Below are positions 1 through 11,242 of a DNA stretch of 64,000 nt, piece by piece. The DNA is taken from positions 174,800 to 238,799 of IMG/VR virus record IMGVR_UViG_3300042147_000020, one strand, 5' to 3'. The stretch's first letter is position 1, and each line of letters starts with the position of its first letter. The position numbers and the translations under genes are program-made. A model generated the notes under the pieces. The model was not told the origin of the DNA. It saw nothing but the letters and a program-made list of their open reading frames with translations, and did no database searches.

Positions 1-942
1 GTGAACGGTGGTGACCCTTTGATGATGCCTCCGAGTTACTACTGGTCGCTGATTGACATCTTGGACCGTCATAACTGTCCTGCCACGATTGCGTTTACCA
101 CTAACCTGTGGGCGTTCTATAAAAAGCCTGAGCTGTGGGTAGACTTGTTTCGTCATCCGCGTGTGGGCGTTGCTACTTCGTTTCAATACGGTGACAAACG
201 ACTCAAGGGTGACTTGAAACCGTTCACCGAAGCTGAATTCTGGGCCTGCTCTGATCTGATGTTGGAGCTGGTGGGTTATCGACCGACGTTCATTGCGGTC
301 ATTGACAAAGACAATGAAGACTCTGTACTCGACACGGTGTTACTGGCTGCTCGTATGGGAGTAGAGGTCAAGCTGAATCACGCACTGGCTTCAGGTCCAG
401 AGGTGGACTATAAAGGTGTGGTGATGGGGAACCAAAACAAGTTCTTCACTCAAGCTGACATCTACCGACACTACTTGGCCATTTATGACGCTGGGTTAGA
501 GGAACACGAGTACAACACTAAACAGATGACCCGTCGTCTGCGTAATGGTGCAACCACCTGTCCGTTGGCTCGTAACTGCGACCAACACATCCGTGCATTA
601 CAACCGGGTGGTGGTAACTACTTCTCGTGTGGAGCTTTCGGGGATGACAATGAATACCCTATCGACTTTCAGCGTGAGATGTCTGGCGAGTTCTTTACTC
701 CGTTAGAGAGTCAACCTGAACTGTTCAGTATGAAAGACGCCTGTGCTGCGTGTCCGATGTTTGCGATCTGCAACGGGTGCAAGAAGACCATTGCCGACAC
801 CAAACGTTTGGGCCTAACTGAACACCACTGTCGCACAATGAAATCGTTGGCTCCTCGGATCATCGAGGCTAACGGTCTAACGGGTCAGTTAGAACCCACT
901 CCGTATGAAGATGAAACTCCCGTTTTGATTGCCCGAGGTTAA
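1..942 (+). CDS. Radical SAM/SPASM-domain protein, 5'-truncated (N-terminal CxxxCxxC lies outside the window)
   Basis: GGDP (GGE-like) motif at the start, FTTN strand, SPASM-type Cys set CPLARNC...SCGAF...CAACPMFAICNGC...HC. Confidence 0.8.
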   Translation: MNGGDPLMMPPSYYWSLIDILDRHNCPATIAFTTNLWAFYKKPELWVDLFRHPRVGVATSFQYGDKRLKGDLKPFTEAEFWACSDLMLELVGYRPTFIAVIDKDNEDSVLDTVLLAARMGVEVKLNHALASGPEVDYKGVVMGNQNKFFTQADIYRHYLAIYDAGLEEHEYNTKQMTRRLRNGATTCPLARNCDQHIRALQPGGGNYFSCGAFGDDNEYPIDFQREMSGEFFTPLESQPELFSMKDACAACPMFAICNGCKKTIADTKRLGLTEHHCRTMKSLAPRIIEANGLTGQLEPTPYEDETPVLIARG

Positions 943-943
943 A

Positions 944-1915
944 ATGAAGCCTGTTGTCCTCTCCGTGAATCCATGGTACTTCTGTAACTTTCGCTGCTCG
1001 TTCTGTTATCTGACCGAACAACAACTCAGTGACCGTAAACTATTACCGCTAGAACGGTTGGCGGAGATGGTAGACGAAGTACAAGCCGCAGGTTACACCG
1101 TTGAACACATCGACATCTATGGGGGTGAAGTGCTGTTACTGCCCGCTGATTACCTCAACGGGATGAAGCAAGTCTTCCACGACCGAGGGATTGACGATCT
1201 GTGTCTGATCACCAACCTGTCTCTGGTGAATGACGTAGCACTCGATGATGACTACGAGTTGTCGGTGTCGTACGATTTCGAAGCCCGTGAGAAACATGAG
1301 AAAGTCTTTGACAACATGCTTGCCTTACCTCGACAGTTTAACGTGTTGAGTTTGGTGGGTCGTAAGTTCTTGGACGTCGTTACTCCAGACGAATACGTAC
1401 ACACCCTGAACCTGCTCTCCCAGCTCTGGTGTGTGGAACTTAAGCCGTACAGCGAGAACCAAGCCAACGCTGACGCAGTGTCGTTCAAAGAGTTCGAGGA
1501 CTTCGTGTGGGCAGTGATCAAACACCCTGACCGTGAGTTCTATCTGGAGAACGAATCCCTGATTCGCAAAGCGGCTGAAACCAAGACTCGTAATGCGTTC
1601 AGTGACAATCACATCTACATCACCCCTGCGGGTCGTTACGCGGTACTGGAGTTTGATGCCAACGACCGTGAGTTCTTCTTGGAGCTGGATGACTTAGCTG
1701 GTTATCAAGCCTGGTGTGCACTTGAAAAAGAGCGGGTTACCGCCAATGAGTTTTGCAGTAAGTGTCAATTCAAAGGCGGGTGTTTATCCGAACACCTAAG
1801 AGACGTTAGGTCGTTAGAGAACTCCTGTAACGGGTTCCACGACCTGTTAGTGAGGTGGGTAGATGAAGGTAGTCCAACACAGACAGAGACTCGAGATCAC
1901 GCTCGATCTGTTTAA
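944..1915 (+). CDS. Radical SAM protein with C-terminal SPASM-like Cys cluster
   Basis: CNFRCSFC (CxxxCxxC), YGGEV, ITN; C-terminal CSKCQFKGGC...SCNG; ATG at 944 after GAGG. Confidence 0.9.
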   Translation: MKPVVLSVNPWYFCNFRCSFCYLTEQQLSDRKLLPLERLAEMVDEVQAAGYTVEHIDIYGGEVLLLPADYLNGMKQVFHDRGIDDLCLITNLSLVNDVALDDDYELSVSYDFEAREKHEKVFDNMLALPRQFNVLSLVGRKFLDVVTPDEYVHTLNLLSQLWCVELKPYSENQANADAVSFKEFEDFVWAVIKHPDREFYLENESLIRKAAETKTRNAFSDNHIYITPAGRYAVLEFDANDREFFLELDDLAGYQAWCALEKERVTANEFCSKCQFKGGCLSEHLRDVRSLENSCNGFHDLLVRWVDEGSPTQTETRDHARSV

Positions 1916-2879
1916 AGGTTGTGGTCATTCCTGCGGTGGCTGCATGATTGATAAAAGTTTGGGTGGAGACGTGAAAGATCTCCCCGAACTCTTAGCCCTG
2001 ATTCAAGAAATGGTCGGGGTGGGTTACGTAGCGTTTGACCTCGGTGTAGGACCGACGGACTACATGACTGCTGATAACCGTCTCGAAGTGATGCAGAACC
2101 GAACCTTCCAAGAGATGGCTCAACAGTTTCATCAGGTAACATTCAACGCAGCCTTCCTCGACACTAACCTGCTCAACTACGGGGTGATGTGTTACGAGAT
2201 TGATTGTGCAGTACCAGACAAGCCGATTCGCTTTCTGATCCCAGCCGTACCGGCTCATTTCAAGAATGAGAAGTTCGGCTTGATGATTAAAGAAAAGTTG
2301 GAGTACATCAAAAAGAACCTGATCGTAGCTCGACTGAACGAAGCAGGTTTTGTGGTGAACTGTACACAGGAAACTGTGGACGAGAAGTTTGAGGAGCACC
2401 TACGTAATGGGTTTGATATTGAATTCGTGGTGGACAAAGACGACATCCTCACCATCCCTTACGGACGAGCCCCAAACAAAGACTTGCTGGTGGCGCAGAA
2501 TGTTCGTCGAGTGTCTCACCGAATCAGTTCTTTCTATGCGGGGCTGAATGGGGAAGACGAACGTCGACGTAACCCTGATCTCCACTACGACACTGGGACA
2601 ATGGTTAACCTGTTGTACACCGGGGGTAAACTGTACTGGGTTCCTTTCCTCAAAGACGACTGTCCGTTCATAGACGACGACTTTGTGATCCCTCGACCTT
2701 GGACTATGGCTAACCTGTTAGAAGCCCGTAATCGCGCTCGTGATAGCTCCTTGGACTATCTGGAAGGCAGTGAGTGTATGGAGTGTCCTCACCTCGGGAG
2801 CTGTGCCGAGAAAGGCATCACCAGCATCATGCAGAAGTTGTCGATTCGGGATTGCTTAGTGGGGTTGGCCGATGTTTAA
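1863..2879 (+). CDS. Divergent radical SAM-like protein
   Basis: KGCGHSCGGC (CxxxCxxC), GPTD in place of GGE, C-terminal CMECPHLGSC...DC; SD GAGG upstream. Confidence 0.75.
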   Translation: MKVVQHRQRLEITLDLFKGCGHSCGGCMIDKSLGGDVKDLPELLALIQEMVGVGYVAFDLGVGPTDYMTADNRLEVMQNRTFQEMAQQFHQVTFNAAFLDTNLLNYGVMCYEIDCAVPDKPIRFLIPAVPAHFKNEKFGLMIKEKLEYIKKNLIVARLNEAGFVVNCTQETVDEKFEEHLRNGFDIEFVVDKDDILTIPYGRAPNKDLLVAQNVRRVSHRISSFYAGLNGEDERRRNPDLHYDTGTMVNLLYTGGKLYWVPFLKDDCPFIDDDFVIPRPWTMANLLEARNRARDSSLDYLEGSECMECPHLGSCAEKGITSIMQKLSIRDCLVGLADV

Positions 2880-3918
2880 CGAATATGGCGTGATCTCTGT
2901 CAACCTCACGATGGAGATCCTAAAAGGCTGTGGGTTCAGTTGTAGTGACTGTGCCGTACAGAAAGACTTCACTACCTCAGACATTCCTCCAGAGGACTCA
3001 CAGGACCTCCTAGGGCTACTGGATGACCTGCGTGTCAATGAAGTTCGTCTGTTTGAGTTCACTGTAGGTCCAACTGACTTTATCAGTGCCCAGAATGGCT
3101 TCGAGACCTTTAAGCATCCGTTAGTCTTGGGATTAGCTGAACGGTTTGAATCCATGACGTTGTCGTTGGCAATGTTGAGTGACAACCGCTTGGTGGAATT
3201 GGGTGGGGTGATTGACCGTATGATCCCCGAGAAGAAGTTCCGGTTGGTGATCCCTGCCACCCTAAAGAACTTACAGAAACCCAAGTACGTGGAAGCCTTA
3301 CGTCGCCGAGTACACTTGTTGCGCGACAGCCTCCATTCTGCGAAGTTCTACCAGATCTACTTGAACTCCAACATGGTACAGGAGAACCTGAACGAACTGT
3401 CGTACGAGACGGTGTCGAACTCAGGGGCGGCTGACTTAGGGGTTCGTACCACGTTGGAGCACGGCTTCGGTCATGCCCGAGCAGGCTTTCAAAACTTGTT
3501 TAACCGTGATCGGTTCATCTACGACCTGAAGCTCTACGTGGAGCGCAGTAAGGTGCTGAAGGACACCCGGTACCAACGTAAGCTGATTCCGATAACGACC
3601 GATGCGTTAGAGCTGACGTACCGTGCAGGCAAGCTTTATTACACACCGGTGGTGATTGAGAAGTTCCACATCTTTGATCCGGTGTTTGAGATCCCTAAAC
3701 CGTGGACAGCACAAGCGGTACTCGATTTCAAAGAGCAGTTGTACTACCGCATGTTAGAAAAATACGTGGTACACCCATTATGTAGAGATTGTTGCTTTGT
3801 CAACACCTGTGCTTTGGGGGATCATCATGTGGTCATGGATTACCTGAAACACGATGAGTGTTTGACCGACATGAAGAACCGCCACGATATGGATCGAAAG
3901 GATACCCACGGTGAGTGA
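2872..3918 (+). CDS. Divergent radical SAM-like protein, paralog of 1863-2879
   Basis: KGCGFSCSDC, VGPTD, LxYxxGKLY motif shared with the paralog, C-terminal CRDCCFVNTC...EC. Confidence 0.75.
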   Translation: MFNEYGVISVNLTMEILKGCGFSCSDCAVQKDFTTSDIPPEDSQDLLGLLDDLRVNEVRLFEFTVGPTDFISAQNGFETFKHPLVLGLAERFESMTLSLAMLSDNRLVELGGVIDRMIPEKKFRLVIPATLKNLQKPKYVEALRRRVHLLRDSLHSAKFYQIYLNSNMVQENLNELSYETVSNSGAADLGVRTTLEHGFGHARAGFQNLFNRDRFIYDLKLYVERSKVLKDTRYQRKLIPITTDALELTYRAGKLYYTPVVIEKFHIFDPVFEIPKPWTAQAVLDFKEQLYYRMLEKYVVHPLCRDCCFVNTCALGDHHVVMDYLKHDECLTDMKNRHDMDRKDTHGE

Positions 3919-4339
3919 ACATAAAGAGTATCAACGCCTGTACGCCCAACTGGTCACAGATCACCCCGATGACTTTGCCAAGATGGAGATCGTCGAGTCT
4001 GAGGAGCTGGTGGAGAACGCTAAGCACTACTTCCGCGAAGCCACCTTCCCGCTGATCTATCCAGCGAAGTCAATGGCTGTCGCTGTAATCTACGCCCTGT
4101 TACTGGAAGAGACTTACGGGTTACATCCGTTTGACTCCCTTAAAGACCCAGACCTATTCTTAGGTCAAGACCCATACTTCCGTCCGTATGACCAACATCC
4201 CCGTGAATACGATCAATTGATCTGGTGGGTGGCGGAACAACCGAACTGGAAAGAAATGGGCTGGGCACCAAAGACAGTTGAATACTTCTACCTTGAGTGC
4301 ACTGAAGCTGGTATCAGTAAAATCAACGAAGGGGTTTGA
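3911..4339 (+). CDS. Hypothetical accessory protein of the rSAM/oxygenase operon
   Basis: 142 aa ORF overlapping the upstream stop and abutting the next start. Confidence 0.7.
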   Translation: MSEHKEYQRLYAQLVTDHPDDFAKMEIVESEELVENAKHYFREATFPLIYPAKSMAVAVIYALLLEETYGLHPFDSLKDPDLFLGQDPYFRPYDQHPREYDQLIWWVAEQPNWKEMGWAPKTVEYFYLECTEAGISKINEGV

Positions 4340-4340
4340 A

Positions 4341-4898
4341 ATGAAATATGTTGAACCGTGGAGCACTCAATTAGCCCACTTCAATGTCGCAGACTTAGTC
4401 GACTTGGGTGCCTTGCGTGACGAGATCTTCAATCTACACTGTTTGACCGAAGGGGACGACCCAGGACAGAAGTGGATCACCTCTGAGTTCGTACCTGAAA
4501 TTATCCGCATGCGTGATGAACTGATTACCCCACGGGTGATTCAGTACGCCAAAGAGTTGTGGGACTACGACATCCCCAAGATTGAAGTAGAGACCTCGGG
4601 TAAGTGGATTCCTGAAGGTGAAGGACTGTTCCCCCACGTTCATGGTGGTTCGTGTATCAGTACGATCTTTTACCCCTCACCAACTAACTTCGGGTTGAGT
4701 TTTTTCGACCCTCGTTCCAATGCTGGCCGGGGTTATCCGAAAGAGATCCGTGATCGGTTCTTTAAAGCCTTCCCGATTGTTCCTGCGGCGGGGGACATTT
4801 GGATCTTCCCAAGTTACTTACAGCACAGTGTGTCGCACGTCCAAGAGAACGTCCGGTTGAGCATGCTGTGTGAATACTACTTGCGGGAGAACGTTTGA
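4341..4898 (+). CDS. 2OG-Fe(II) oxygenase (PF13759/TIGR02466-like), copy 1
   Basis: PHVHGGS, FDPR, IFPSYLQHSV, RLS motifs. Confidence 0.85.
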   Translation: MKYVEPWSTQLAHFNVADLVDLGALRDEIFNLHCLTEGDDPGQKWITSEFVPEIIRMRDELITPRVIQYAKELWDYDIPKIEVETSGKWIPEGEGLFPHVHGGSCISTIFYPSPTNFGLSFFDPRSNAGRGYPKEIRDRFFKAFPIVPAAGDIWIFPSYLQHSVSHVQENVRLSMLCEYYLRENV

Positions 4899-5464
4899 TG
4901 GAACTGTTCCGTCCTTGGCAAACCAGTATTGCCAGAATCAACGTGGCTGAGTTGTGTGACTTGGATCAGCTTACTCAAGAGATCCTAATTGTCTCTGCCG
5001 GCGGCACTGTAGCCGTCCCACAAGACGCTACACGCGACGATCCGTTCGTAGGTGGCATCGTTACTCTACGTGACGACGTAATCACCCCCAGAGTCATGGA
5101 GTACATTCGCACAGAGTACGGTCTCAACTGTGATCCTGAAACGGTTGCTATGGAAACGTGGGGGATGAACATCGCTCCCGGTAGTGACTTGGAAACACAC
5201 ATCCACGGTTTGTCCAACTTCACGACGGTGTTCTACCCCTGTGAGTCAGACGCTCGCTTAGTACTGGTTGATCCTCGTTTGAATGCAGCACGAGGGTTCT
5301 CTAAGTCTTTGCGTGACCGTAACTTCGGTAACCTACGAGTTGACCCTAAACCCGGAGACTTGTGGATCTTCCCAAGCTTCGTCCCCCATTCTGTGACGTC
5401 AGTAGGTAACGAGTTCCGCCTGTCTTTGGTGAACGATTACTTCCTAGACCCCACCCTCGATTAA
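4898..5464 (+). CDS. 2OG-Fe(II) oxygenase, copy 2
   Basis: THIHGLS, VDPR, IFPSFVPHSV, RLS; TGATG overlap with copy 1. Confidence 0.85.
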   Translation: MELFRPWQTSIARINVAELCDLDQLTQEILIVSAGGTVAVPQDATRDDPFVGGIVTLRDDVITPRVMEYIRTEYGLNCDPETVAMETWGMNIAPGSDLETHIHGLSNFTTVFYPCESDARLVLVDPRLNAARGFSKSLRDRNFGNLRVDPKPGDLWIFPSFVPHSVTSVGNEFRLSLVNDYFLDPTLD

Positions 5465-5475
5465 GAGACCTGAAC

Positions 5476-6030
5476 ATGGAACTGATTCAACCTTGGAACA
5501 CGTCGATCCTTAAAGCGAACGTGTCCCACATGTGTAACGTGGAAGCGATTGCCGATGAGATCCTGTCACTACACAGTCTCTCCCCACAACAGTCCACCAC
5601 GCAGTACAAAATCACCCCAGAAGAGTTCCCAGCTCTGTGTGACTTCCGTGACCGGGTGGTAACTAACCTGGTGAAAGAATTCGTCAAACAAACGATGCGT
5701 TTCGACCTGACACAGTTCACCGTCGATACGTTCGGTAAGTGGTTCGAGAAAGGCATGGATCTTTCTCCGCACACTCACGGTAGCACTGGGATCACCTCTG
5801 TGTTCTACCCGGCTGACTACAAGTCGGGAATGACCGTGTACGATCCGCGTGGTAATGCTTGCCGTGGCTACCCGCGTCAAATCCGGGACGACTACTTCGC
5901 TCCCTTTTACGTCTACCCCAAGGCTGGTGATTTGATCATCATGCCGTCGTTCTTGCAACACTACGTCCCCACCGTAGAAGACGACCTGCGTCTGTCGTTG
6001 ATCAACGATTACATGTTCCCAAGCGTATAA
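5476..6030 (+). CDS. 2OG-Fe(II) oxygenase, copy 3
   Basis: PHTHGST, YDPR, IMPSFLQHYV, RLS. Confidence 0.85.
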   Translation: MELIQPWNTSILKANVSHMCNVEAIADEILSLHSLSPQQSTTQYKITPEEFPALCDFRDRVVTNLVKEFVKQTMRFDLTQFTVDTFGKWFEKGMDLSPHTHGSTGITSVFYPADYKSGMTVYDPRGNACRGYPRQIRDDYFAPFYVYPKAGDLIIMPSFLQHYVPTVEDDLRLSLINDYMFPSV

Positions 6031-6033
6031 ACA

Positions 6034-6066
6034 GAGGAGGGGTTCGTCCCCTCCTTTTATGCCGTC
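6034..6066 (+). terminator. Intrinsic terminator closing the rSAM/oxygenase operon
   Basis: GGAGGGG-ttcgt-CCCCTCC then TTTTATGCCGTC. Confidence 0.8.
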
Positions 6067-6109
6067 ATCTTATGTAAGCTTTTAGCAAATCACGGAAGGG
6101 TGAAGCATT

Positions 6110-6787
6110 ATGTTTGAAGTCGTGGATAAGGGCGCTATTAAAGAGAAACAGCGCAAGTTGAAAGAGCTGGGCCTGTATGAAGGGAATGTGGACGGTATCT
6201 GGGGACCTCTGAGTCAAGCGGCTTGGGATAAGACTCAAGGTGACAAAGTTGTGTCTGCTCCGTTTGATACCACTCGGATCATCTGGGCCACCAAGGTCTC
6301 CAAAGAGTTCATCCTCAAAGTACGGGACATCGCCAAACGTCTTGAGATGCCCACAGAGGGCTCTAACTGGTTGATGGCGTGTATGGCCTTCGAGACCGGT
6401 GAAACCTTCTCACCGACGATCAAGAACGGTGCTGGCGCTCCTTACTACGGACTGATCCAGTTCGGTGAAGCAGCAGCCAAAGATTGTGGCACTACGGTGG
6501 CCGCTCTGGTAAAGATGACTGCTGAGCAACAGCTCGACTACGTATACAAGTTCTTCAAGCCGTACACCGGTAAGCTGAAGACCCTCAGCGACGTTTACTC
6601 TCGCATCATCTGGCCAGTGGCCGTGGGTAAGTCAGAAGACTACGTGATCTTTGACACGAAGGTACGTCCTACTGCGTACGTTCAGAACAAGGGTCTGGAC
6701 ATCAACAAGGACGGCCTCGTCACCAAAGCTGAATGTGCGGCGAAGGTCCAAGAAAAATACGTGCGTGGACTGAAGTTCGTCGCCTAA
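6110..6787 (+). CDS. Modular endolysin: N-terminal peptidoglycan-binding domain plus lysozyme/transglycosylase-like domain
   Basis: QRKLKELGLYEGNVDGIWGPLS (PG_binding_1-like); MACMAFETG catalytic Glu; GLIQF motif. Confidence 0.85.
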   Translation: MFEVVDKGAIKEKQRKLKELGLYEGNVDGIWGPLSQAAWDKTQGDKVVSAPFDTTRIIWATKVSKEFILKVRDIAKRLEMPTEGSNWLMACMAFETGETFSPTIKNGAGAPYYGLIQFGEAAAKDCGTTVAALVKMTAEQQLDYVYKFFKPYTGKLKTLSDVYSRIIWPVAVGKSEDYVIFDTKVRPTAYVQNKGLDINKDGLVTKAECAAKVQEKYVRGLKFVA

Positions 6788-6799
6788 TGGAATCTATAC

Positions 6800-8365
6800 A
6801 TGAGTAAGCTAGCCGCCTACCTCCCCTCGATGGAGGAAGAACAATACGAACCAGAAATCCGTGACGATCACACTGAGTTCTCTCAGTTCGACGTGACTAC
6901 CACTGGTGCTGAAGTTGACCAAGCACTCGCCGACCACAGTACCACTGGTGAGATCATCGCCACGTTGGAAAGTATCCTCGACGACATCGAAGCTACTGAC
7001 AGTCTGACTCCGCAGTCGCGTGTGTTTATCGGCCATTCGATTCAGTCGGTACAACACCGCATCGGCTTGGTTGTTCGCACGCCTTCGATGGAAGCGAATG
7101 ATGAAGACGGTCGCCAGATCTCCATGGAAGGGATCGCCCAAGGGTTGGCTAAACTCTGGGAAGGCACTGTTGAACTGATCCGTAAGATCCTTCGCAGCAT
7201 CCGTGACTTCTTCGCCACGATCCTCGGCTTCGGTAAACGTAAAGAGAAGCGCATCAAGTATCAACTGGAGAAGGCCAAGGAAGGTGGCAACGATGCGTCG
7301 ATCTCCAAGCTGGCTGAGAAGAACCTGCTCAAGCACTTGAAAGACGTGTCTTCGGTACAGAAGGTTCTCGACAATCTGGTAGCTACGCCACTGGGGAAGG
7401 AACGTCCAGAGCAACTGGTTCTACTGTCTCCAGCGTCAGCCCAGATCGTGGTGCGTGAAAGCGATGGTCAGGTGGACAGTTCTCGTCCAATGACGGTCAA
7501 CGGTCAAGACATCGTGGCCATGCGTAAGAAAGACGTGCAGGCCGTGAGTCATATGTCCTTGGGTCAGGTCAAACACGCTCTGATTACTGCCATGGTGGTT
7601 AACGGTGGTCGTACGTTCCTTACTAAGGAGAAGGACTTCGTCTTGATGTCTCACGAAGACGTCAACGAGATGGTGTGGGACACTGCGTTCCGGGGTAAGG
7701 AAGCCCGTCAGAAAGGTAAGGAGCTGTCAGCACTGCTGATGAAGATTGCTAATAAAGCTGAGAAAGCTTTTACTAGCGTCGATGCTTTTAACCGACACAA
7801 TGTCAACATCTCAGACGAGTTGTTAAACGCCACTCGCATTGAGCGCGCCGCTGTCTTCAAGCTCTTCCGTGAGTTCGTTGGTAAGGGCGACATGGTACCG
7901 TTGGGTTCAGCAATGTTGCGCGTAGTGGATCATCATCCTGAACACTTGCAGATTGCCAAGTTCGATCACATTCCTGTGGTCAGCGAGAACATCGGTAAAG
8001 TCGTGAAGATCAAGTTCCCACAATACGGGGAAGTGAAGAAAGCGGCTGACGGTATCGTGACGGTTACACTGTTGAGTAACTTCAACGGTTCAATCGACGC
8101 TGCACTCAAAGGCTTCGAGGACGTACTGAAAGTCTACGAGCGGTTACAAGCGTGGGCGATTAGTAATGCGAAGGGTGATAACATCATCCAACGTCAGGTC
8201 AGTAGCTGCATCCGTGAAATGTACGACGAGCCAGTGAAGTACTTCAGTTCGTACATCCGTGCGGTTGGCGTAATGGAAACAGTCGTGATTGGTTGGGGTG
8301 ATTCTATCACTCACCCGTTGAGCAAGCTGACAGATTCCAAGAACCTGATGGCTGAACTCGCCTAA
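6800..8365 (+). CDS. Virion inner-head protein (phiKZ-type paralog family)
   Basis: Acidic propeptide with SME sites (LPSMEE, TPSMEA, QISMEG) followed by amphipathic helix LWEGTVELIRKILRSIRDFF. Confidence 0.7.
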   Translation: MSKLAAYLPSMEEEQYEPEIRDDHTEFSQFDVTTTGAEVDQALADHSTTGEIIATLESILDDIEATDSLTPQSRVFIGHSIQSVQHRIGLVVRTPSMEANDEDGRQISMEGIAQGLAKLWEGTVELIRKILRSIRDFFATILGFGKRKEKRIKYQLEKAKEGGNDASISKLAEKNLLKHLKDVSSVQKVLDNLVATPLGKERPEQLVLLSPASAQIVVRESDGQVDSSRPMTVNGQDIVAMRKKDVQAVSHMSLGQVKHALITAMVVNGGRTFLTKEKDFVLMSHEDVNEMVWDTAFRGKEARQKGKELSALLMKIANKAEKAFTSVDAFNRHNVNISDELLNATRIERAAVFKLFREFVGKGDMVPLGSAMLRVVDHHPEHLQIAKFDHIPVVSENIGKVVKIKFPQYGEVKKAADGIVTVTLLSNFNGSIDAALKGFEDVLKVYERLQAWAISNAKGDNIIQRQVSSCIREMYDEPVKYFSSYIRAVGVMETVVIGWGDSITHPLSKLTDSKNLMAELA

Positions 8366-8370
8366 CACGC

Positions 8371-8408
8371 GGCATAGAGGGAGGGCTCACGCCCTCCCTC
8401 GTTATGCC
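8371..8408. terminator. Bidirectional terminator between convergent genes
   Basis: GGCATA-GAGGGAGGGC-tcac-GCCCTCCCTC-gt-TATGCC. Confidence 0.75.
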
Positions 8409-8818
8409 CCTTGTGCTCCAAGTAACAACTTCACCAGCTCCATGCCGGTACTGAAGATAGTGTTCAGGGTTTCTACGTCCATCCCACCTTCTTCACTAGA
8501 GTACATAAAGGTGGACATCGCTCCAATCACCACCATGGCCAACGCAATGATCACCGCACCGGCTTTCATAATGTTCACCCCACGGGATGAGCTTGAACCG
8601 AAGCCCTCCAGGTTACCGATGTCCATGGTCAGAATAGCGACTTGGGTTTTATCCTCCATCACTACAATCTTTTCCATAACTTGGTCACCAGTATCGGCCA
8701 AAGTAACCAGCTTGTCGTCTGGCAGATGGAAGTTGCAGATCTTCACGATCATTCCTCCCCATGACTTAGTGCCGATTGCCTCTGAACCGAGAACCCCTAG
8801 CGCGCCTCCGATGTTCAT
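8402..8818 (-). CDS. Hypothetical membrane protein
   Basis: SD GAGGGGAG; hydrophobic segment AGAVIIALAMVVIGAM. Confidence 0.65.
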   Translation of the reverse strand: MNIGGALGVLGSEAIGTKSWGGMIVKICNFHLPDDKLVTLADTGDQVMEKIVVMEDKTQVAILTMDIGNLEGFGSSSSRGVNIMKAGAVIIALAMVVIGAMSTFMYSSEEGGMDVETLNTIFSTGMELVKLLLGAQGA

Positions 8819-8849
8819 ATTGCTCCCCTCGCTCGCAATGCGTGCTATA

Positions 8850-9092
8850 TCAGCTATCCATCTGGTACCTCGAGGTAATCTGGACTCTGGTCTGAGTCTT
8901 CAACCCCTTTGCCTCTATTTCCAACTGCTGGTTGGTTCCTTCCAAGCTCTCTGCCTTTTGAGCAGCTTCGGCTAAAGCTTTAGCAGTGTCATCGTAGTAC
9001 CAATACAGTCCATAGAACAGACCGGTAACTAGAAGTAGTCGGAGACTATGTTTACCAGTCCCCCTGAAAATTAACACCATCCGTGATTTCAT
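8850..9092 (-). CDS. Small membrane-anchored coiled-coil protein
   Basis: N-terminal TM LLLVTGLFYGLYWYY then heptad-like AKALAEAAQKAESLEGTNQQLE; start overlaps the RuvC stop. Confidence 0.6.
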   Translation of the reverse strand: MKSRMVLIFRGTGKHSLRLLLVTGLFYGLYWYYDDTAKALAEAAQKAESLEGTNQQLEIEAKGLKTQTRVQITSRYQMDS

Positions 9093-9679
9093 ATCCCCGC
9101 ACCCTTAACGAAATTGATTAACGCTAAGCATTTGAAGTAACCTACGGCGATGCTGTCAGTGGAGTGCTCGTCGAGATCCTCAATGCGCTTACCAGACATG
9201 TTCCGAAAGTTAGGCAACTTCAGAATAGCCCACTTGACATCATCTTTGTTCTTGCTCTTACCAGACACGCCCACTGCCATCTTTGCCGAAGGAGGATCAA
9301 CTGTCTCCAAAGGCATGCAGAGATCGTATTCGTAGAGCGCGCGACGGATGGCAGTCTTGCATTCAACCAGTGCTTCGAAGGCCTGCGGAAATCGCCCCAA
9401 GAAGGGCGACTCACAGATCAAAGAATGAATACCAAAGTAGCGCATCCAGTTCAACAGCTCCACGCCGTGAGAATGGAGTTTAGCCCATCGACCACCGTGT
9501 ACTTCTTCTACGCCGGGATACCGACGCATGTTACGGCTCCCGTGTAGGGTGTTGACGTCCCGAAGGATAATCTCCCCAGTAAAGAGATCCACGTCGAGGA
9601 TACAAGTCCCCAAGGTGTCTGTACCAGGGTCGATAGCGCCTACACGAAAGTAACGACTGTGTTCAGGGATAAACAACAT
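9089..9679 (-). CDS. ruvC: RuvC-like Holliday junction resolvase
   Basis: GAIDPGT, LICESP, DSIAVG catalytic acidic motifs. Confidence 0.85.
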   Translation of the reverse strand: MLFIPEHSRYFRVGAIDPGTDTLGTCILDVDLFTGEIILRDVNTLHGSRNMRRYPGVEEVHGGRWAKLHSHGVELLNWMRYFGIHSLICESPFLGRFPQAFEALVECKTAIRRALYEYDLCMPLETVDPPSAKMAVGVSGKSKNKDDVKWAILKLPNFRNMSGKRIEDLDEHSTDSIAVGYFKCLALINFVKGAGI

Positions 9680-9685
9680 AAGCGA

Positions 9686-10552
9686 TTAACCGTTGTTAGC
9701 ACTCACGTAGTCGGCGTCAGACAGCAACGGCTCGGTAGCACCCAGTTCGATGTCCTGAGTGAAGCCTTTGTTAGTGAAGGCTACGGAGTGGTGAGTAGTG
9801 ATGAAGGAGTTCACCTGACAGGCGATAACTTCTTTCATGTTGAACTGCGTGTTACCTGGACCTTGAACAGTCAGGGTACGGTCAACACCGGAACACAGAC
9901 CGATCTCGGAGATCACGGCGTAGGCTTCGTTGTCGAACAGAATGCGGCAAGCGTCGATCAGCTCTTTCACGTCTTCGGCACTGAAGATCAGTGTCAAGAT
10001 ACTCGAGGTCGACAGGTAGTCGCCAGACGAACTGATCACACCGGTGTTCGACATCACTGGTGGAGTCGGGTTCAGGTTAGCCAGGTTCGGTACGTACGGT
10101 TCGGTAACTTTCTGGTCACCGTCGACGATCGTGTGGTTGATGGCCGGAGCAGTGTTCGCCAAGCTGATGCGCTTGAGGTAGTACGCCCAGTAGTTGGTAC
10201 CAGCGATGTTCAACAGTACCCGCAGTGCGTAACGACTACGTTCGATGACGGTCAGGTCATTGTCGACGCGGCGCAGTACAAAAGGCAGGTGACGGTACAG
10301 AGCAGCATCGGAAGCTCGGTGTGGCAAAGGAGATGTGTAAGGAACACCATCGGCGCCCACCATGTTCTTGTGACCGCCGTTACCGATACAGTAGTACTGC
10401 ATTGCGGGGCGTTCGAGTTCACTGAGTTCTTCATCAACAAAGACGTTGAACTTCTCGTTGAGAGTGGTGTGGTCCAGAATCGTTGGGCGTTGACCCAGAA
10501 GCAATGAGGTCTGAAGGGATGAGCCCCAGACACTACGGGTAATTGTTTTCAT
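9686..10552 (-). CDS. Virion structural protein (phiKZ-like conserved)
   Basis: Likely start MKTITRS at 10552; lies in the structural block. Confidence 0.6.
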   Translation of the reverse strand: MKTITRSVWGSSLQTSLLLGQRPTILDHTTLNEKFNVFVDEELSELERPAMQYYCIGNGGHKNMVGADGVPYTSPLPHRASDAALYRHLPFVLRRVDNDLTVIERSRYALRVLLNIAGTNYWAYYLKRISLANTAPAINHTIVDGDQKVTEPYVPNLANLNPTPPVMSNTGVISSSGDYLSTSSILTLIFSAEDVKELIDACRILFDNEAYAVISEIGLCSGVDRTLTVQGPGNTQFNMKEVIACQVNSFITTHHSVAFTNKGFTQDIELGATEPLLSDADYVSANNG

Positions 10553-10633
10553 TTGAAAAACCTTTATCAACAAGAGGTGACAGAGTCGACACAGGGCCAA
10601 CTAAATTAATCTGGTTCACAGTATAACTGTACA

Positions 10634-10668
10634 GACGGCATAGAAGGAGGCCGAAGCCTCCTCGTATG
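10634..10668 (-). terminator. Intrinsic terminator
   Basis: AGGAGGC-cgaa-GCCTCCT hairpin (TTCG loop on minus) with GACGGCATA flank. Confidence 0.7.
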
Positions 10669-10669
10669 T

Positions 10670-11242
10670 TTAAGCATCCATCGTGGTAACAGAACCCAGC
10701 GTAGTAGTACCCGCCAAGTAATCCAATTGACCACCACTCGGATCAACCACCTTAATGTAGAAACTGCCACCACCAGCGCTCTTCGGAATGAACCGAGGAG
10801 ACTTGTCAGCGACCTTCAACTCGAACACACCCGCCACAGCCATCGCAGCCGTGATCTGAGTATCGTCAGTCATCAACGTGGTCGTGTTTGGAATCAAGAC
10901 GTCTTGTGCCTCGATCACCAAACCGTACTGTACTTTGAGACTGGCTTTCAGTGTAGAGAAGCTGAAAGGGAAGTTGGCAGGGAATGGTAGTTGCACCACG
11001 CCGTTCATCAGGGTCGTGACGTTACCGCGTTTGTACTTCAGAGTCATCGCCCCTTTGTACTTACCCGGAGTCCCGTCGGTGGCTACGATCCGAGCGGTAC
11101 CCACCACTGTGATCATGTCAGCAGCGTGGGTGTAGATCAGATCCAGATGAGGAATCTCCAGATACACATCGTTCGAATCTTGGAACAATGCGATCAGCGT
11201 TTCGTCACCCGTGCTCTTTAAAACTGTTGCTAATTCCAACAC
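10670..11242 (-). CDS. Putative tail/baseplate-associated virion protein
   Basis: 190 aa ORF, SD AAGGAG, position in the structural block. Confidence 0.55.
   Translation of the reverse strand: MLELATVLKSTGDETLIALFQDSNDVYLEIPHLDLIYTHAADMITVVGTARIVATDGTPGKYKGAMTLKYKRGNVTTLMNGVVQLPFPANFPFSFSTLKASLKVQYGLVIEAQDVLIPNTTTLMTDDTQITAAMAVAGVFELKVADKSPRFIPKSAGGGSFYIKVVDPSGGQLDYLAGTTTLGSVTTMDA

What the first reader, a model, noticed from the sequence alone, without database searches (positions are those of the whole stretch)
1863..3918. Two paralogous atypical rSAM proteins with GPTD replacing the SAM-binding GGE motif
Seen: both share KGCGxSCxxC, VGPTD, LxYxxGKLY..P, F.IP.PWT and C-terminal CxxCx5C, whereas the first two rSAMs keep GGD/GGE. 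Inference: these may be catalytically altered or non-catalytic Fe-S subunits (scaffold, substrate recognition or electron transfer) forming a heteromeric complex with the canonical pair.
Basis: partly seen in the sequence, partly recalled or inferred. Interest (0 to 1): 0.7.

Follow-up and report, generated by a model that had tools for sequence, protein, structure and literature searches.

The report
Divergent radical-SAM paralogs in phage cassette
Two adjacent genes of a soil jumbo phage encode very divergent but strictly conserved radical-SAM-like iron-sulfur proteins, part of a large enzyme cassette that probably modifies the Cys-His-rich tail of a neighbouring phage protein; what chemistry they do is unknown.

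Summary

Predicted structures show a radical-SAM (beta/alpha)6 half-barrel plus a SPASM/twitch-like C-terminal domain. The best match is anSMEcpe, at Z 15.3 for ORF3 and 12.8 for ORF4.

They belong to an uncurated family of about 200 clusters at 50% identity. No Pfam or NCBIfam model reaches threshold. Across 132 representatives these features are near-invariant:
- CX3CX2C, with Gly or Asp and never an aromatic residue before the third Cys
- G-P-T-D after strand beta2, where GGE normally sits
- Asn72, Asn166 and Arg202
- four C-terminal Cys

This looks like a remodelled but constrained active site, not a decayed one.

"Non-catalytic" and "heteromeric complex" remain untested; the one complex prediction gave no answer. 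Copy number varies from 1 to 4 per cassette through repeated duplications, which argues against a fixed 2+2 complex.

The genes lie in a conserved cassette found in jumbo phages and in one Oligoflexia MAG. In this genome it also holds four canonical rSAM/SPASM enzymes, a cupin and three 2OG oxygenases. It also holds a ~180-aa protein whose C-terminus, (C-H-x-S)3-R-G-R-R, is kept in 79 of 80 homologs and is the likely substrate.

The parts
1..942 (+). 3' part of canonical rSAM/SPASM gene 'ORF1'. The full gene is 371 aa and starts 174 nt upstream of the window, at L003:14626-15741. It has CNFKCTFC, GGD, and a full SPASM Cys set.
   Evidence: Pfam Radical_SAM 2.9e-12; phrog_1802 3.7e-49; Cys map.
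929..1915 (+). Canonical rSAM 'ORF2', 328 aa, with CNFRCSFC, GGE and CX2CX5C...C. It is the closest GGE-bearing relative of the ORF3/ORF4 family.
   Evidence: Pfam Radical_SAM 4.8e-10. The family HMM hits ORF2-type proteins weakly in 5 loci. hhalign of the family against the ORF2 type gives probability 94.4%, E 8.8e-8, 304 columns.
1863..2879 (+). ORF3, 338 aa: atypical rSAM/SPASM-like Fe-S protein. It is the slowly evolving copy (66% identical to DT01 gp058).
   Evidence: AF2 pLDDT 88.8, pTM 0.87. anSMEcpe Z 15.3 over 290 residues.
1920..1943 (+). ORF3 CX3CX2C motif (CGHSCGGC). Gly26 occupies the position that is usually aromatic.
2049..2060 (+). ORF3 G-P-T-D directly after predicted strand beta2 (residues 56-62), the place of GGE.
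2775..2855 (+). ORF3 C-terminal Cys305, Cys308, Cys314 and Cys331 (CX2CX5C-X16-C): inferred ligands of one auxiliary [4Fe-4S] cluster.
   Evidence: 100% conserved in 132 representatives; coordinates checked.
2872..3918 (+). ORF4, 348 aa: paralog of ORF3 and the faster-evolving copy (41% identical to DT01 gp057). Its start overlaps the ORF3 stop.
   Evidence: AF2 pLDDT 79.6. anSMEcpe Z 12.8.
2929..2952 (+). ORF4 CX3CX2C motif (CGFSCSDC). Asp26 precedes the third Cys.
3067..3078 (+). ORF4 G-P-T-D motif.
3781..3861 (+). ORF4 C-terminal Cys304, Cys307, Cys313 and Cys330 (plus Cys308).
3911..4339 (+). 142-aa protein (phrog_20737). Its start overlaps the ORF4 stop. It is conserved in 7 related phage cassettes and often sits directly after an atypical copy.
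4278..4898 (+). 2OG-Fe(II) oxygenase-like protein (PF13759), paralog 1.
   Evidence: 3.1e-9.
4895..5464 (+). 2OG-Fe(II) oxygenase-like protein (PF13759), paralog 2.
   Evidence: 1.2e-8.
5476..6030 (+). 2OG-Fe(II) oxygenase-like protein (PF13759), paralog 3. This is the end of the cassette; a baseplate-hub/lysozyme-like gene follows at 6110-6787.

Best explanation
ORF3 and ORF4 are tandem-duplicated members of an uncurated, very divergent branch of the radical-SAM/SPASM-type peptide-maturase fold.

Each most likely binds two [4Fe-4S] clusters. One sits on the N-terminal CX3CX2C loop. The other is a fully Cys-ligated auxiliary cluster on CX2CX5C...C (inferred from motif and fold).

Their cosubstrate pocket is remodelled: Gly or Asp replaces the aromatic residue, P-T-D sits where GGE sits, and I-P-A sits where the S-x-D ribose motif sits. 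It is nevertheless under strict purifying selection. I therefore infer that they are working enzymes or cluster-dependent subunits, not decayed copies.

They work inside a conserved cassette of about 10 kb. Its other genes are four canonical rSAM/SPASM enzymes, a JmjC/cupin protein, three 2OG oxygenases and three small or unknown proteins. Its most probable substrate is the invariant C-terminal tail (C-H-x-S)3-R-G-R-R-COOH of a ~180-aa protein encoded next to the first rSAM.

The two copies most likely act on different residues or steps of that tail. This is sub-functionalisation after duplication, with ORF3 the more constrained copy.

Shown: paralogy, fold, motif conservation, cassette synteny, tail conservation.

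Inferred: cluster content, that the tail is the substrate, that the proteins are catalytically competent.

Unknown: the chemistry, and whether SAM is cleaved.
For: Paralogy.

Fold:
- AF2 models with a (beta/alpha)6 core plus hairpin and C-terminal helices.
- Foldseek top hits are all rSAM/SPASM or twitch enzymes.
- VIA-align gives anSMEcpe Z 15.3 for ORF3 and 12.8 for ORF4, followed by SuiB, ChlB, SkfB, TigE, CteB and viperin.
- AFDB cluster representative A0A0F9PAZ7, 'Radical SAM core domain-containing protein', TM 0.76, E 7e-20.
- Protein-language-model neighbours are rSAM/SPASM clusters.

Sequence link to a GGE-bearing rSAM of the same cassette: hhalign probability 94.4%, E 8.8e-8, 304 columns. 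Weak Pfam Radical_SAM hits in 7 of 32 members.

Conservation:
- 197 clusters at E<=1e-3.
- CX3CX2C in all 130 sequences with an intact N-terminus.
- G63 89%, P64 92%, T65 93%, D66 99%, N72 95%, N166 86%, R202 93%, four C-terminal Cys 100%.

Duplication history: the ORF3 clade is sister to the ORF4 clade (SH-like support 89), with independent duplications elsewhere.

Cassette:
-.
- The canonical members score best against peptide maturases: YhhB, FxsB, anSME, PapB, DynA.

Substrate candidate:
- A tail protein is present in 8 of 8 loci with enough flank.
- 79 of 80 homologs end in (CHxx)3-R[GS]RR while their bodies are 28-50% identical.

Precedents for rSAM enzymes acting on repeat-bearing targets: the NCBIfam CXXX-repeat target and maturase families, and HxsB/HxsC maturing the protein HxsA with HxS repeats (PMC13128918).
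Against: - No curated HMM recognises ORF3 or ORF4.
- Homology to rSAM rests on fold, one sub-threshold profile match and the Cys motif.
- Three of the textbook SAM-contact motifs are changed, so SAM binding is not assured.
- The model is least confident exactly around the cluster loop (pLDDT about 71 in ORF3, about 42 in ORF4).
- No residue-level structural superposition was available, and three alignments place GGE against V-G-P, P-T-D or T-A-D.
- The substrate assignment is guilt by association only.
- The heterodimer test gave no answer.
- rSAM enzymes and O2-dependent oxygenases in one cassette of a phage that also carries a class I (aerobic) RNR is an unresolved oddity.
Confidence: 0.6

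Rival explanations
1. ORF3 and ORF4 no longer cleave SAM. They serve as Fe-S scaffold, electron-relay or substrate-holding subunits bound to the canonical rSAM enzymes or to each other. The unique iron is perhaps closed by a protein ligand such as Asp66, as a Glu does in TsrM (my recollection, not checked here).
For: - Loss of GGE, of the aromatic residue and of the S-x-D ribose motif.
- Translational coupling ORF2-ORF3-ORF4-142 aa.
- Asymmetric divergence of the two copies.
- One of three complex runs scored 0.46, but the tool says this must not be used as evidence.
- In the HXS system a small protein, HxsD, binds one rSAM (PMC13128918). Here a conserved 142-aa protein follows ORF4.
Against: - The CX3CX2C site keeps exactly three Cys in all members and the pocket residues are near-invariant. 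This is expected for catalysis.
- Bona fide rSAM enzymes without a literal GGE exist (HemN and BioB, from my knowledge).
- Copy number of 1 to 4 per cassette, with one copy in RSL2, argues against a fixed heteromer.
- No interaction evidence was obtained.
Confidence: 0.25
2. The cassette does not act on the Cys-His tail protein. Instead it makes or modifies a small molecule or a nucleotide/DNA base (a phage auxiliary metabolic or DNA-hypermodification pathway). ORF3 and ORF4 would be small-molecule rSAM enzymes of the viperin/MoaA/BtrN kind.
For: - Viperin, MoaA, BlsE and BtrN are among the structural matches.
- In RSL2 two genes that look DHFR-like by eye lie inside the cassette (not tested).
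- The DT01 authors loosely linked the rSAM genes to DNA repair and host metabolism (PMC8541153).
Against: - The best full-length structural matches and the best HMM matches of the canonical members are peptide- or protein-modifying SPASM enzymes.
- The tail protein is syntenic in 8 of 8 loci, and its last 16 residues are almost invariant.
- The bacterial version has a 104-aa precursor-like protein.
- The cassette sits in the tail/baseplate module, not the nucleotide-metabolism module.
Confidence: 0.1
3. The resemblance is a relic. ORF3 and ORF4 are structural or assembly proteins of the virion that merely descend from rSAM enzymes, and their Cys motifs bind Zn or stabilise the fold.
For: - Location between tail-fibre-like genes and a baseplate-hub/lysozyme gene.
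- A similar placement of eight rSAM genes in the structural cluster of phage 332-Vera was noted as 'highly unusual' (PMC12390700).
Against: - The family also occurs in a bacterial MAG among ordinary chromosomal genes.
- The polar residues kept at the C-terminal ends of the barrel strands are typical of enzymes.
- No virion proteomics evidence was found.
Confidence: 0.05

Closest known systems
Anaerobic sulfatase-maturating enzyme anSMEcpe (PDB 4K36-4K39) and other rSAM/SPASM peptide or protein maturases (SuiB, CteB, ChlB, SkfB, TigE, PqqE)
   Same: - Whole-length fold: (beta/alpha)6 rSAM core followed by a beta-hairpin and Cys-bearing C-terminal helices. Z is 15.3 over 290 of 338 residues for ORF3 and 12.8 over 303 residues for ORF4.
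- CX3CX2C after beta1, and a CX2CX5C motif in the C-terminal domain.
- A protein or peptide is the likely substrate.
   Different: - Sequence identity is 7-13%.
- There is no GGE, no aromatic residue before the third Cys, and no S-x-D on beta4.
- Only four C-terminal Cys are conserved, enough for one auxiliary cluster instead of two, and the X3-Cys of CX2CX5CX3C is missing.
- Pfam and NCBIfam SPASM or Radical_SAM models do not reach threshold.
The cassette's own GGE-bearing rSAM 'ORF2' (window 929-1915) and its orthologs
   Same: - Nearest detectable sequence relative: hhalign probability 94.4%, E 8.8e-8 over 304 columns. The family HMM hits ORF2-type proteins at E 1e-9 to 4e-4.
- Same length.
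- Same reduced CX2CX5C...C C-terminus.
   Different: ORF2 keeps CNFRCSFC, YGGE and VSYD, and passes the Pfam Radical_SAM threshold. ORF3 and ORF4 do not.
HXS anti-phage system: the rSAM enzymes HxsB/HxsC plus the small protein HxsD mature the protein HxsA, which carries His-Xaa-Ser repeats (Nat Commun 2026, PMC13128918)
   Same: - Several rSAM enzymes encoded together with a repeat-bearing protein substrate, and here H-x-S also recurs within C-H-x-S.
- A small conserved partner-sized protein lies next to an rSAM.
- The target is a whole protein rather than a short peptide.
   Different: - HXS is a bacterial defence system; this cassette is phage-borne.
- NCBIfam HxsB/HxsC scores are 12-24 bits against cut-offs of 268-370.
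- The repeat here starts with Cys and lies at the extreme C-terminus.
- There is no peptidoglycan-binding domain in the tail protein.
- ORF3 and ORF4 themselves give no Hxs hit.
CXXX-repeat radical-SAM target peptides and their maturases (NCBIfam TIGR04117 and TIGR04115; Pfam 38.1 PF27846 'tSAM_targ_Cxxx_rpt' as named by the ESM Atlas)
   Same: - The target carries Cys at every fourth residue, next to rSAM/SPASM maturases.
- The Atlas lists a largely viral cluster with PF27846 among the feature neighbours of the tail protein.
   Different: - There are only three repeats, each Cys-His, followed by R-G-R-R.
- No HMM hit of the tail protein to these families.
- The Atlas score of 0.43 is only a lead.
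- The cassette's maturases do not reach the TIGR04115 cut-off.
gp057 and gp058 of Pseudomonas phage pPa_SNUABM_DT01 (MW735835)
   Same: - Orthologs of ORF4 (41% identity) and ORF3 (66% identity), in the same order and the same cassette.
- Already labelled 'radical SAM protein' in GenBank, and counted among six rSAM genes by the authors (PMC8541153).
   Different: Only a generic label. The atypical motifs, the family and the cassette's likely substrate were not discussed.

Membership tests
Radical SAM superfamily | CX3CX2C motif in the loop after strand beta1, giving three Cys ligands to a [4Fe-4S] cluster | tested here: met
   CGHSCGGC and CGFSCSDC at residues 20-27 of both proteins. The motif is present in all 130 family representatives with an intact N-terminus. 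Apparent absences are start-codon miscalls at Met28.
Radical SAM superfamily | Partial (beta/alpha)6 TIM-barrel core | tested here: met
   AF2 models have six beta-alpha units. VIA-align Z is 15.3 and 12.8 to anSMEcpe, and all top matches are rSAM enzymes.
Radical SAM superfamily | Match to Pfam PF04055 above the gathering score | tested here: not met
   No hit for ORF3 or ORF4 even at E<=1. Seven of 32 relatives give weak hits, best E 0.0016.
Radical SAM superfamily | GGE (or GGD) motif at the C-terminal end of beta2, contacting the amino group of SAM | tested here: not met
   G-P-T-D follows beta2 (residues 56-62) in ORF3, and T-V-G-P-T-D in ORF4. Asp66 (99% conserved) may replace the Glu, but the register differs between alignments.
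Radical SAM superfamily | Aromatic or bulky residue before the third Cys (CX3CX-phi-C), packing on the adenine of SAM | tested here: not met
   The residue is Gly in 90%, Asp in 7% and never aromatic. The four canonical paralogs have Phe or His.
Radical SAM superfamily | Reductive cleavage of SAM to a 5'-deoxyadenosyl radical | not testable with these tools
   This needs anaerobic biochemistry.
SPASM / twitch subfamily (PF13186, TIGR04085) | C-terminal domain with CX2CX5CX3C plus upstream Cys, seven Cys for two auxiliary clusters (SPASM) | tested here: not met
   Only CX2CX5C plus one Cys 16 residues downstream is conserved. The X3-Cys position is Gly318 (EKG) in ORF3. There is no SPASM HMM hit.
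SPASM / twitch subfamily (PF13186, TIGR04085) | Beta-hairpin plus helical C-terminal extension packed on the barrel and carrying at least one auxiliary Fe-S site | tested here: met
   The model has a hairpin at 248-259 and helices at 282-325. The structural alignment runs to the C-terminus of anSMEcpe, SuiB and ChlB. Four invariant Cys are present.
HXS system maturases HxsB/HxsC | Score above the NCBIfam TIGR03978 / TIGR03977 cut-offs | tested here: not met
   ORF3 and ORF4 give no hit. The canonical paralogs score 12.8-23.8 bits against cut-offs of 370 and 267.9.
HXS system maturases HxsB/HxsC | Neighbouring target protein with tandem His-Xaa-Ser repeats | tested here: inconclusive
   The tail protein ends in C-H-x-S repeated three times. 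H-x-S is therefore present, but embedded in a Cys-led repeat, and the protein is otherwise unrelated.
CXXX-repeat rSAM target system (TIGR04115 maturase, TIGR04117 target) | Target peptide with Cys every fourth residue | tested here: met
   79 of 80 homologs have (CHxx)3, and all 80 have C-x3-C-x3-C.
CXXX-repeat rSAM target system (TIGR04115 maturase, TIGR04117 target) | Maturase and target reach the curated HMM cut-offs | tested here: not met
   No TIGR04115 or TIGR04117 hit for this genome's proteins. Only neighbours in locus L005 score, at 73.9 bits against a cut-off of 350.

The most novel reading that the evidence does not exclude
ORF3 and ORF4 define a new subclass of the radical-SAM fold. 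In this reading, the pocket built from C-x-G-C, P-T-D, Asn72, Asn166 and Arg202 supports chemistry that differs from canonical 5'-deoxyadenosyl radical generation. It might use another binding mode of SAM, another cosubstrate, or cluster-only redox or sulfur chemistry. The cassette as a whole would be a virus-encoded multi-step maturation pathway, with six rSAM-like proteins and four oxygenases. It would turn the invariant (Cys-His-x-Ser)3-RGRR tail of a phage protein into a heavily modified, possibly metal-binding or cross-linked structure used during infection.
Probability: 0.25. Interest if true: 0.8.

Novelty: new variant of a known kind. Interest (0 to 1): 0.55.

Why it matters
Radical-SAM enzymes are usually recognised by CX3CX2C plus GGE-type SAM contacts. 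A family of about 200 sequence clusters keeps the fold and both cluster sites but has a differently built and equally conserved pocket. Studying it would test which SAM contacts are dispensable, or reveal non-canonical chemistry.

The surrounding cassette is one of the largest concentrations of rSAM-like genes known in a virus. It is conserved from Ralstonia/Burkholderia to Pseudomonas-type jumbo phages and occurs in at least one bacterium. It comes with a clear candidate substrate that can be examined by mass spectrometry in a cultivable relative, pPa_SNUABM_DT01. This makes a long-noted curiosity, 'many rSAM genes in the structural module of jumbo phages', directly testable.

Tried and rejected
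- **Near-identical DNA in phage GenBank records:** none found.
- **Pfam and NCBIfam on ORF3 and ORF4:** no family. PHROGs gave only a weak hit to phrog_31457, of unknown function.
- **Profile search of solved structures by sequence:** only MiaB at E 0.6, over the Cys loop.
- **hhalign of the small alignments against canonical paralogs:** partial matches only. A full-length match needed the 132-sequence profile.
- **Complex prediction, ORF3 + ORF4:** verdict 'no answer', with scores 0.46, 0.00 and 0.00 and controls not run. Not used as evidence.
- **The search for related loci with the family alignment in genome contigs:** A single-protein scan only recovered the Oligoflexia MAG itself.
- **Virion proteomics of related phages:** the supplement of PMC5468394 covers RP12 and RP31, whose rSAM genes are of another type. 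Nothing usable.
- **Literature searches:** nothing beyond genome-announcement-level remarks on phage rSAM cassettes, 'tSAM', CXXX repeats or phage RiPPs.
- **Public runs:** only two rhizosphere metagenome DNA runs hold the region, and no RNA run does. Expression was therefore not examined.
- **Rejected idea, copy number matches repeat number:** the number of atypical copies (1 to 4) does not track the number of CH repeats (2 to 3).

Full report
**What the window is.** The window is the last 64 kb of a 238,799-bp single-contig virus record. It comes from a rhizosphere metagenome, and CheckV rates it 86% complete. It is a jumbo phage. ORF3 and ORF4 have orthologs in Pseudomonas phage pPa_SNUABM_DT01 (66% and 41% identity) and distant ones in the Ralstonia/Burkholderia phages RSL2, RSF1, FLC and S13. 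The rest of the window holds ordinary jumbo-phage genes: a virion protein, a polymerase, a DnaB-like helicase, an NAD-dependent ligase, a class I RNR and a thymidylate synthase. It has no tRNA genes.

**The observation.**
- ORF3 (1863-2879, 338 aa) and ORF4 (2872-3918, 348 aa) lie on the + strand and overlap by ATGTTTAA.
- The two upstream genes do keep GGD and GGE.
- BLASTP between the two gives 24% identity over 335 residues, E 2e-28.
- Their ortholog alignments match with probability 100%, E 1e-46.

**What the proteins are.**
- Neither protein hits any Pfam or NCBIfam model.
- AlphaFold2 models built on natural alignments are confident: ORF3 pLDDT 88.8 and pTM 0.87; ORF4 pLDDT 79.6 and pTM 0.83.
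- Both models show six beta-alpha units, then a beta-hairpin and C-terminal helices.
- Foldseek's significant PDB matches are all radical-SAM enzymes with SPASM or twitch domains, or viperin and MoaA.
- VIA-align gives anSMEcpe Z 15.3 over 290 residues for ORF3 and Z 12.8 for ORF4. SuiB, ChlB, SkfB, TigE and CteB follow.
- The nearest AlphaFold-DB cluster is labelled 'Radical SAM core domain-containing protein' (TM 0.76, E 7e-20).
- Language-model neighbours are rSAM/SPASM clusters.
- At the sequence level, a 132-member family profile aligns over 304 columns with the cassette's own GGE-bearing rSAM, the ORF2 type (probability 94.4%, E 8.8e-8).
- Seven of 32 relatives give weak Pfam Radical_SAM hits.
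These are radical-SAM-fold proteins.

**How atypical and how conserved.**
- An exhaustive profile search finds 197 clusters at 50% identity with E<=1e-3, and 176 with E<=1e-10. Nearly all are 330-390 aa, and no ordinary rSAM enzymes are drawn in.
- Among 132 full-length representatives, CX3CX2C is present in every sequence whose N-terminus is called. The apparent exceptions start at the Met just after the motif, which is a gene-calling artefact. The same artefact affects RSL2 ORF071.
- The residue before the third Cys is Gly in 90% and Asp in 7%, and never aromatic.
- Conservation at other positions: G63 89%, P64 92%, T65 93%, D66 99%, N72 95%, N166 86%, R202 93%.
- Cys305, Cys308, Cys314 and Cys331 are each 100% conserved.
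- The model places G-P-T-D directly after strand beta2 (56-62), where GGE sits in canonical enzymes.
- Strand beta4 carries I-P-A where the four canonical paralogs have S-x-D.
- Exact residue equivalence is uncertain. BLASTP pairs GGE with V-G-P or deletes it. hhalign pairs it with T-A-D. An ungapped reading anchored on helix alpha1 pairs G-G-E with P-T-D, so that Asp66 replaces the Glu (my reading of the sequences).
- The four C-terminal Cys fit one fully ligated auxiliary cluster of the CX2CX5C...C kind. The X3-Cys and the upstream Cys of a full SPASM domain are absent. This is an inference from motifs.

- 'Atypical' is right.
- 'Non-catalytic' is not supported. Decayed enzymes lose their site, whereas here the altered site is the most conserved part of the protein.
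- Whether SAM is bound and cleaved cannot be settled in silico.
- The heteromer idea could only be tried for ORF3 + ORF4, and the job returned 'no answer'. I do not use it as evidence.
- Comparative data speak against a fixed 2+2 complex. RSL2 has one copy. This phage, DT01, L004 and L005 have two. An Oligoflexia MAG has three, and L009 has four in tandem.
- In the family tree the ORF3 clade is sister to the ORF4 clade (support 89). The copies of L004 and of L007 arose by separate duplications.
- ORF3 is the most conserved gene of the cassette and ORF4 one of the least. Against DT01 they are 66% and 41% identical, while ORF2 is 59%, the 142-aa protein 59% and the tail protein 37%. That asymmetry fits sub- or neo-functionalisation.

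**The surroundings.** On the + strand of locus L003 (genome 160001-179800) the genes run in this order:

| Order | Gene | Size / note |
|---|---|---|
| 1 | JmjC/cupin protein | 174 aa |
| 2 | rSAM/SPASM | 345 aa |
| 3 | tail protein | 183 aa |
| 4 | phrog_20767 protein | 245 aa |
| 5 | unknown protein | 373 aa |
| 6 | rSAM/SPASM | 337 aa |
| 7 | ORF1, rSAM/SPASM | 371 aa |
| 8 | ORF2, rSAM | 328 aa |
| 9 | ORF3 | 338 aa |
| 10 | ORF4 | 348 aa |
| 11 | phrog_20737 protein | 142 aa |
| 12-14 | PF13759 2OG-oxygenase paralogs | three genes |

- Tail-fibre-like genes precede the cassette and a baseplate-hub/lysozyme-like gene follows it.
- The genome has only these four Pfam-detectable rSAM genes and these two atypical copies.
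- The same cassette, with variations, is found in DT01, RSL2 and five metagenomic contigs.
- It is also found on a 97-kb contig of an Oligoflexia MAG, among ordinary bacterial genes such as AhpC/AhpF, OsmC and a rhodanese.
- Published genome papers mention these genes only as curiosities (PMC8541153, PMC12390700, PMC8066314, PMC11898562).

**Likely substrate.**
- Directly after the first rSAM/SPASM gene, every locus with enough flank (8 of 8) encodes a protein whose C-terminus is a Cys-led four-residue repeat ending in R-[GS]-R-R. The protein is about 180 aa in phages and 104 aa in the MAG.
- Among 80 database homologs whose bodies are only 28-50% identical, 79 end in (C-H-x-x)3-R-[GS]-R-R-COOH.
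- The canonical rSAMs of the cassette score best, though below cut-offs, against peptide maturases: YhhB, FxsB, anSME, PapB and DynA.
- Curated precedents exist for rSAM enzymes acting on CXXX-repeat peptides (TIGR04115 and TIGR04117).
- There is also a precedent for paired rSAM enzymes maturing a whole protein with His-x-Ser repeats, helped by a small partner protein. This is the HXS system (PMC13128918).
- I therefore infer that the cassette modifies this tail, and that ORF3 and ORF4 contribute one or more steps.
- The 142-aa protein overlaps the ORF4 stop and recurs next to atypical copies in other loci. It is a candidate partner, which I could not test.

**Verdict.**
- The feature is real and its description is accurate.
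- It is a divergent, uncurated branch of a known superfamily, sitting in a conserved but uncharacterised phage cassette. I rate it a new variant of a known kind.
- The mechanism I commit to is a cluster-dependent enzyme with a remodelled cosubstrate pocket, acting on the Cys-His tail protein. My confidence is about 0.6.

Noticed in passing
L003:11238-11789 (+), i.e. genome 171238-171789, about 3.0-3.6 kb upstream of window position 1: A 183-aa protein that ends in CHTSCHGACHGSRGRR. The last 16 residues, (CHxx)3-R[GS]RR-COOH, are kept in 79 of 80 homologs whose bodies are only 28-50% identical. It always follows the first rSAM/SPASM gene of the cassette. It is the likely substrate or a metal-binding tail.
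   Followed up: yes
window 3911-4339 (+): A 142-aa protein (phrog_20737) with a GTG start overlapping the ORF4 stop. It is conserved in DT01, RSL2 and five metagenomic cassettes, often directly after an atypical rSAM copy. It is a possible small partner protein, comparable to HxsD in the HXS system.
   Followed up: partly
window 4278-6030 (+) and L003:9671-10195: Three tandem PF13759 2OG-Fe(II)-oxygenase paralogs and a JmjC/cupin protein share the cassette with six oxygen-sensitive rSAM-like proteins. The phage also encodes an aerobic class I RNR (window 40441-42948).
   Followed up: partly
L007 (MAG Oligoflexia bacterium, JARLHE010000037.1), 18-11071: A bacterial version of the cassette. It has three atypical copies, canonical rSAM/SPASM genes, the 245-aa protein and a 104-aa precursor-like protein ending in ...CNSNFICHSNCYTPPPKSRSRR. 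It is flanked by ordinary chromosomal genes (AhpC/AhpF, OsmC, rhodanese).
   Followed up: partly
L009:10001-14548: Four atypical rSAM-like genes in tandem in one metagenomic phage contig. Their motif variants include S-P-T-D, N-P-T-D and G-P-V-D.
   Followed up: partly
L005:17089-20356: A second Cys-repeat protein (187 aa, ending in CQRSCQVNCQVGCQVACQGC...) lies between two PapB-like rSAM/SPASM maturases in the same phage contig. It looks like a separate CXXX-repeat maturation unit.
   Followed up: partly
L002:6971-8035 (RSL2 ORF071) and proteins P0003, P0008, P0011 and others: Gene calls for this family often start at the Met just after CX3CX2C, or further downstream in RSL2. Public annotations therefore lack the cluster motif, although the upstream in-frame sequence encodes it.
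   Followed up: yes
L003:14597-14622 (+), about 180-200 nt upstream of window position 1: A strong terminator-like hairpin (10 pairs, 7 of them G-C, followed by a T run) lies between the 337-aa rSAM gene and ORF1. The cassette may therefore be two transcription units, or be attenuated there.
   Followed up: no
window 1863-1915: ORF2 carries a C-terminal extension that its orthologs lack. It overlaps the ORF3 start by 53 nt. A GAGGTGG ribosome-binding-like sequence precedes the ORF3 ATG.
   Followed up: partly
L002:9104-10253 (RSL2 ORF073 and ORF074): Two genes inside the RSL2 cassette look like dihydrofolate reductases by eye, from the N-terminal I-G-x-x-G-x-x-P-W pattern. This was not tested with any tool.
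   Followed up: no
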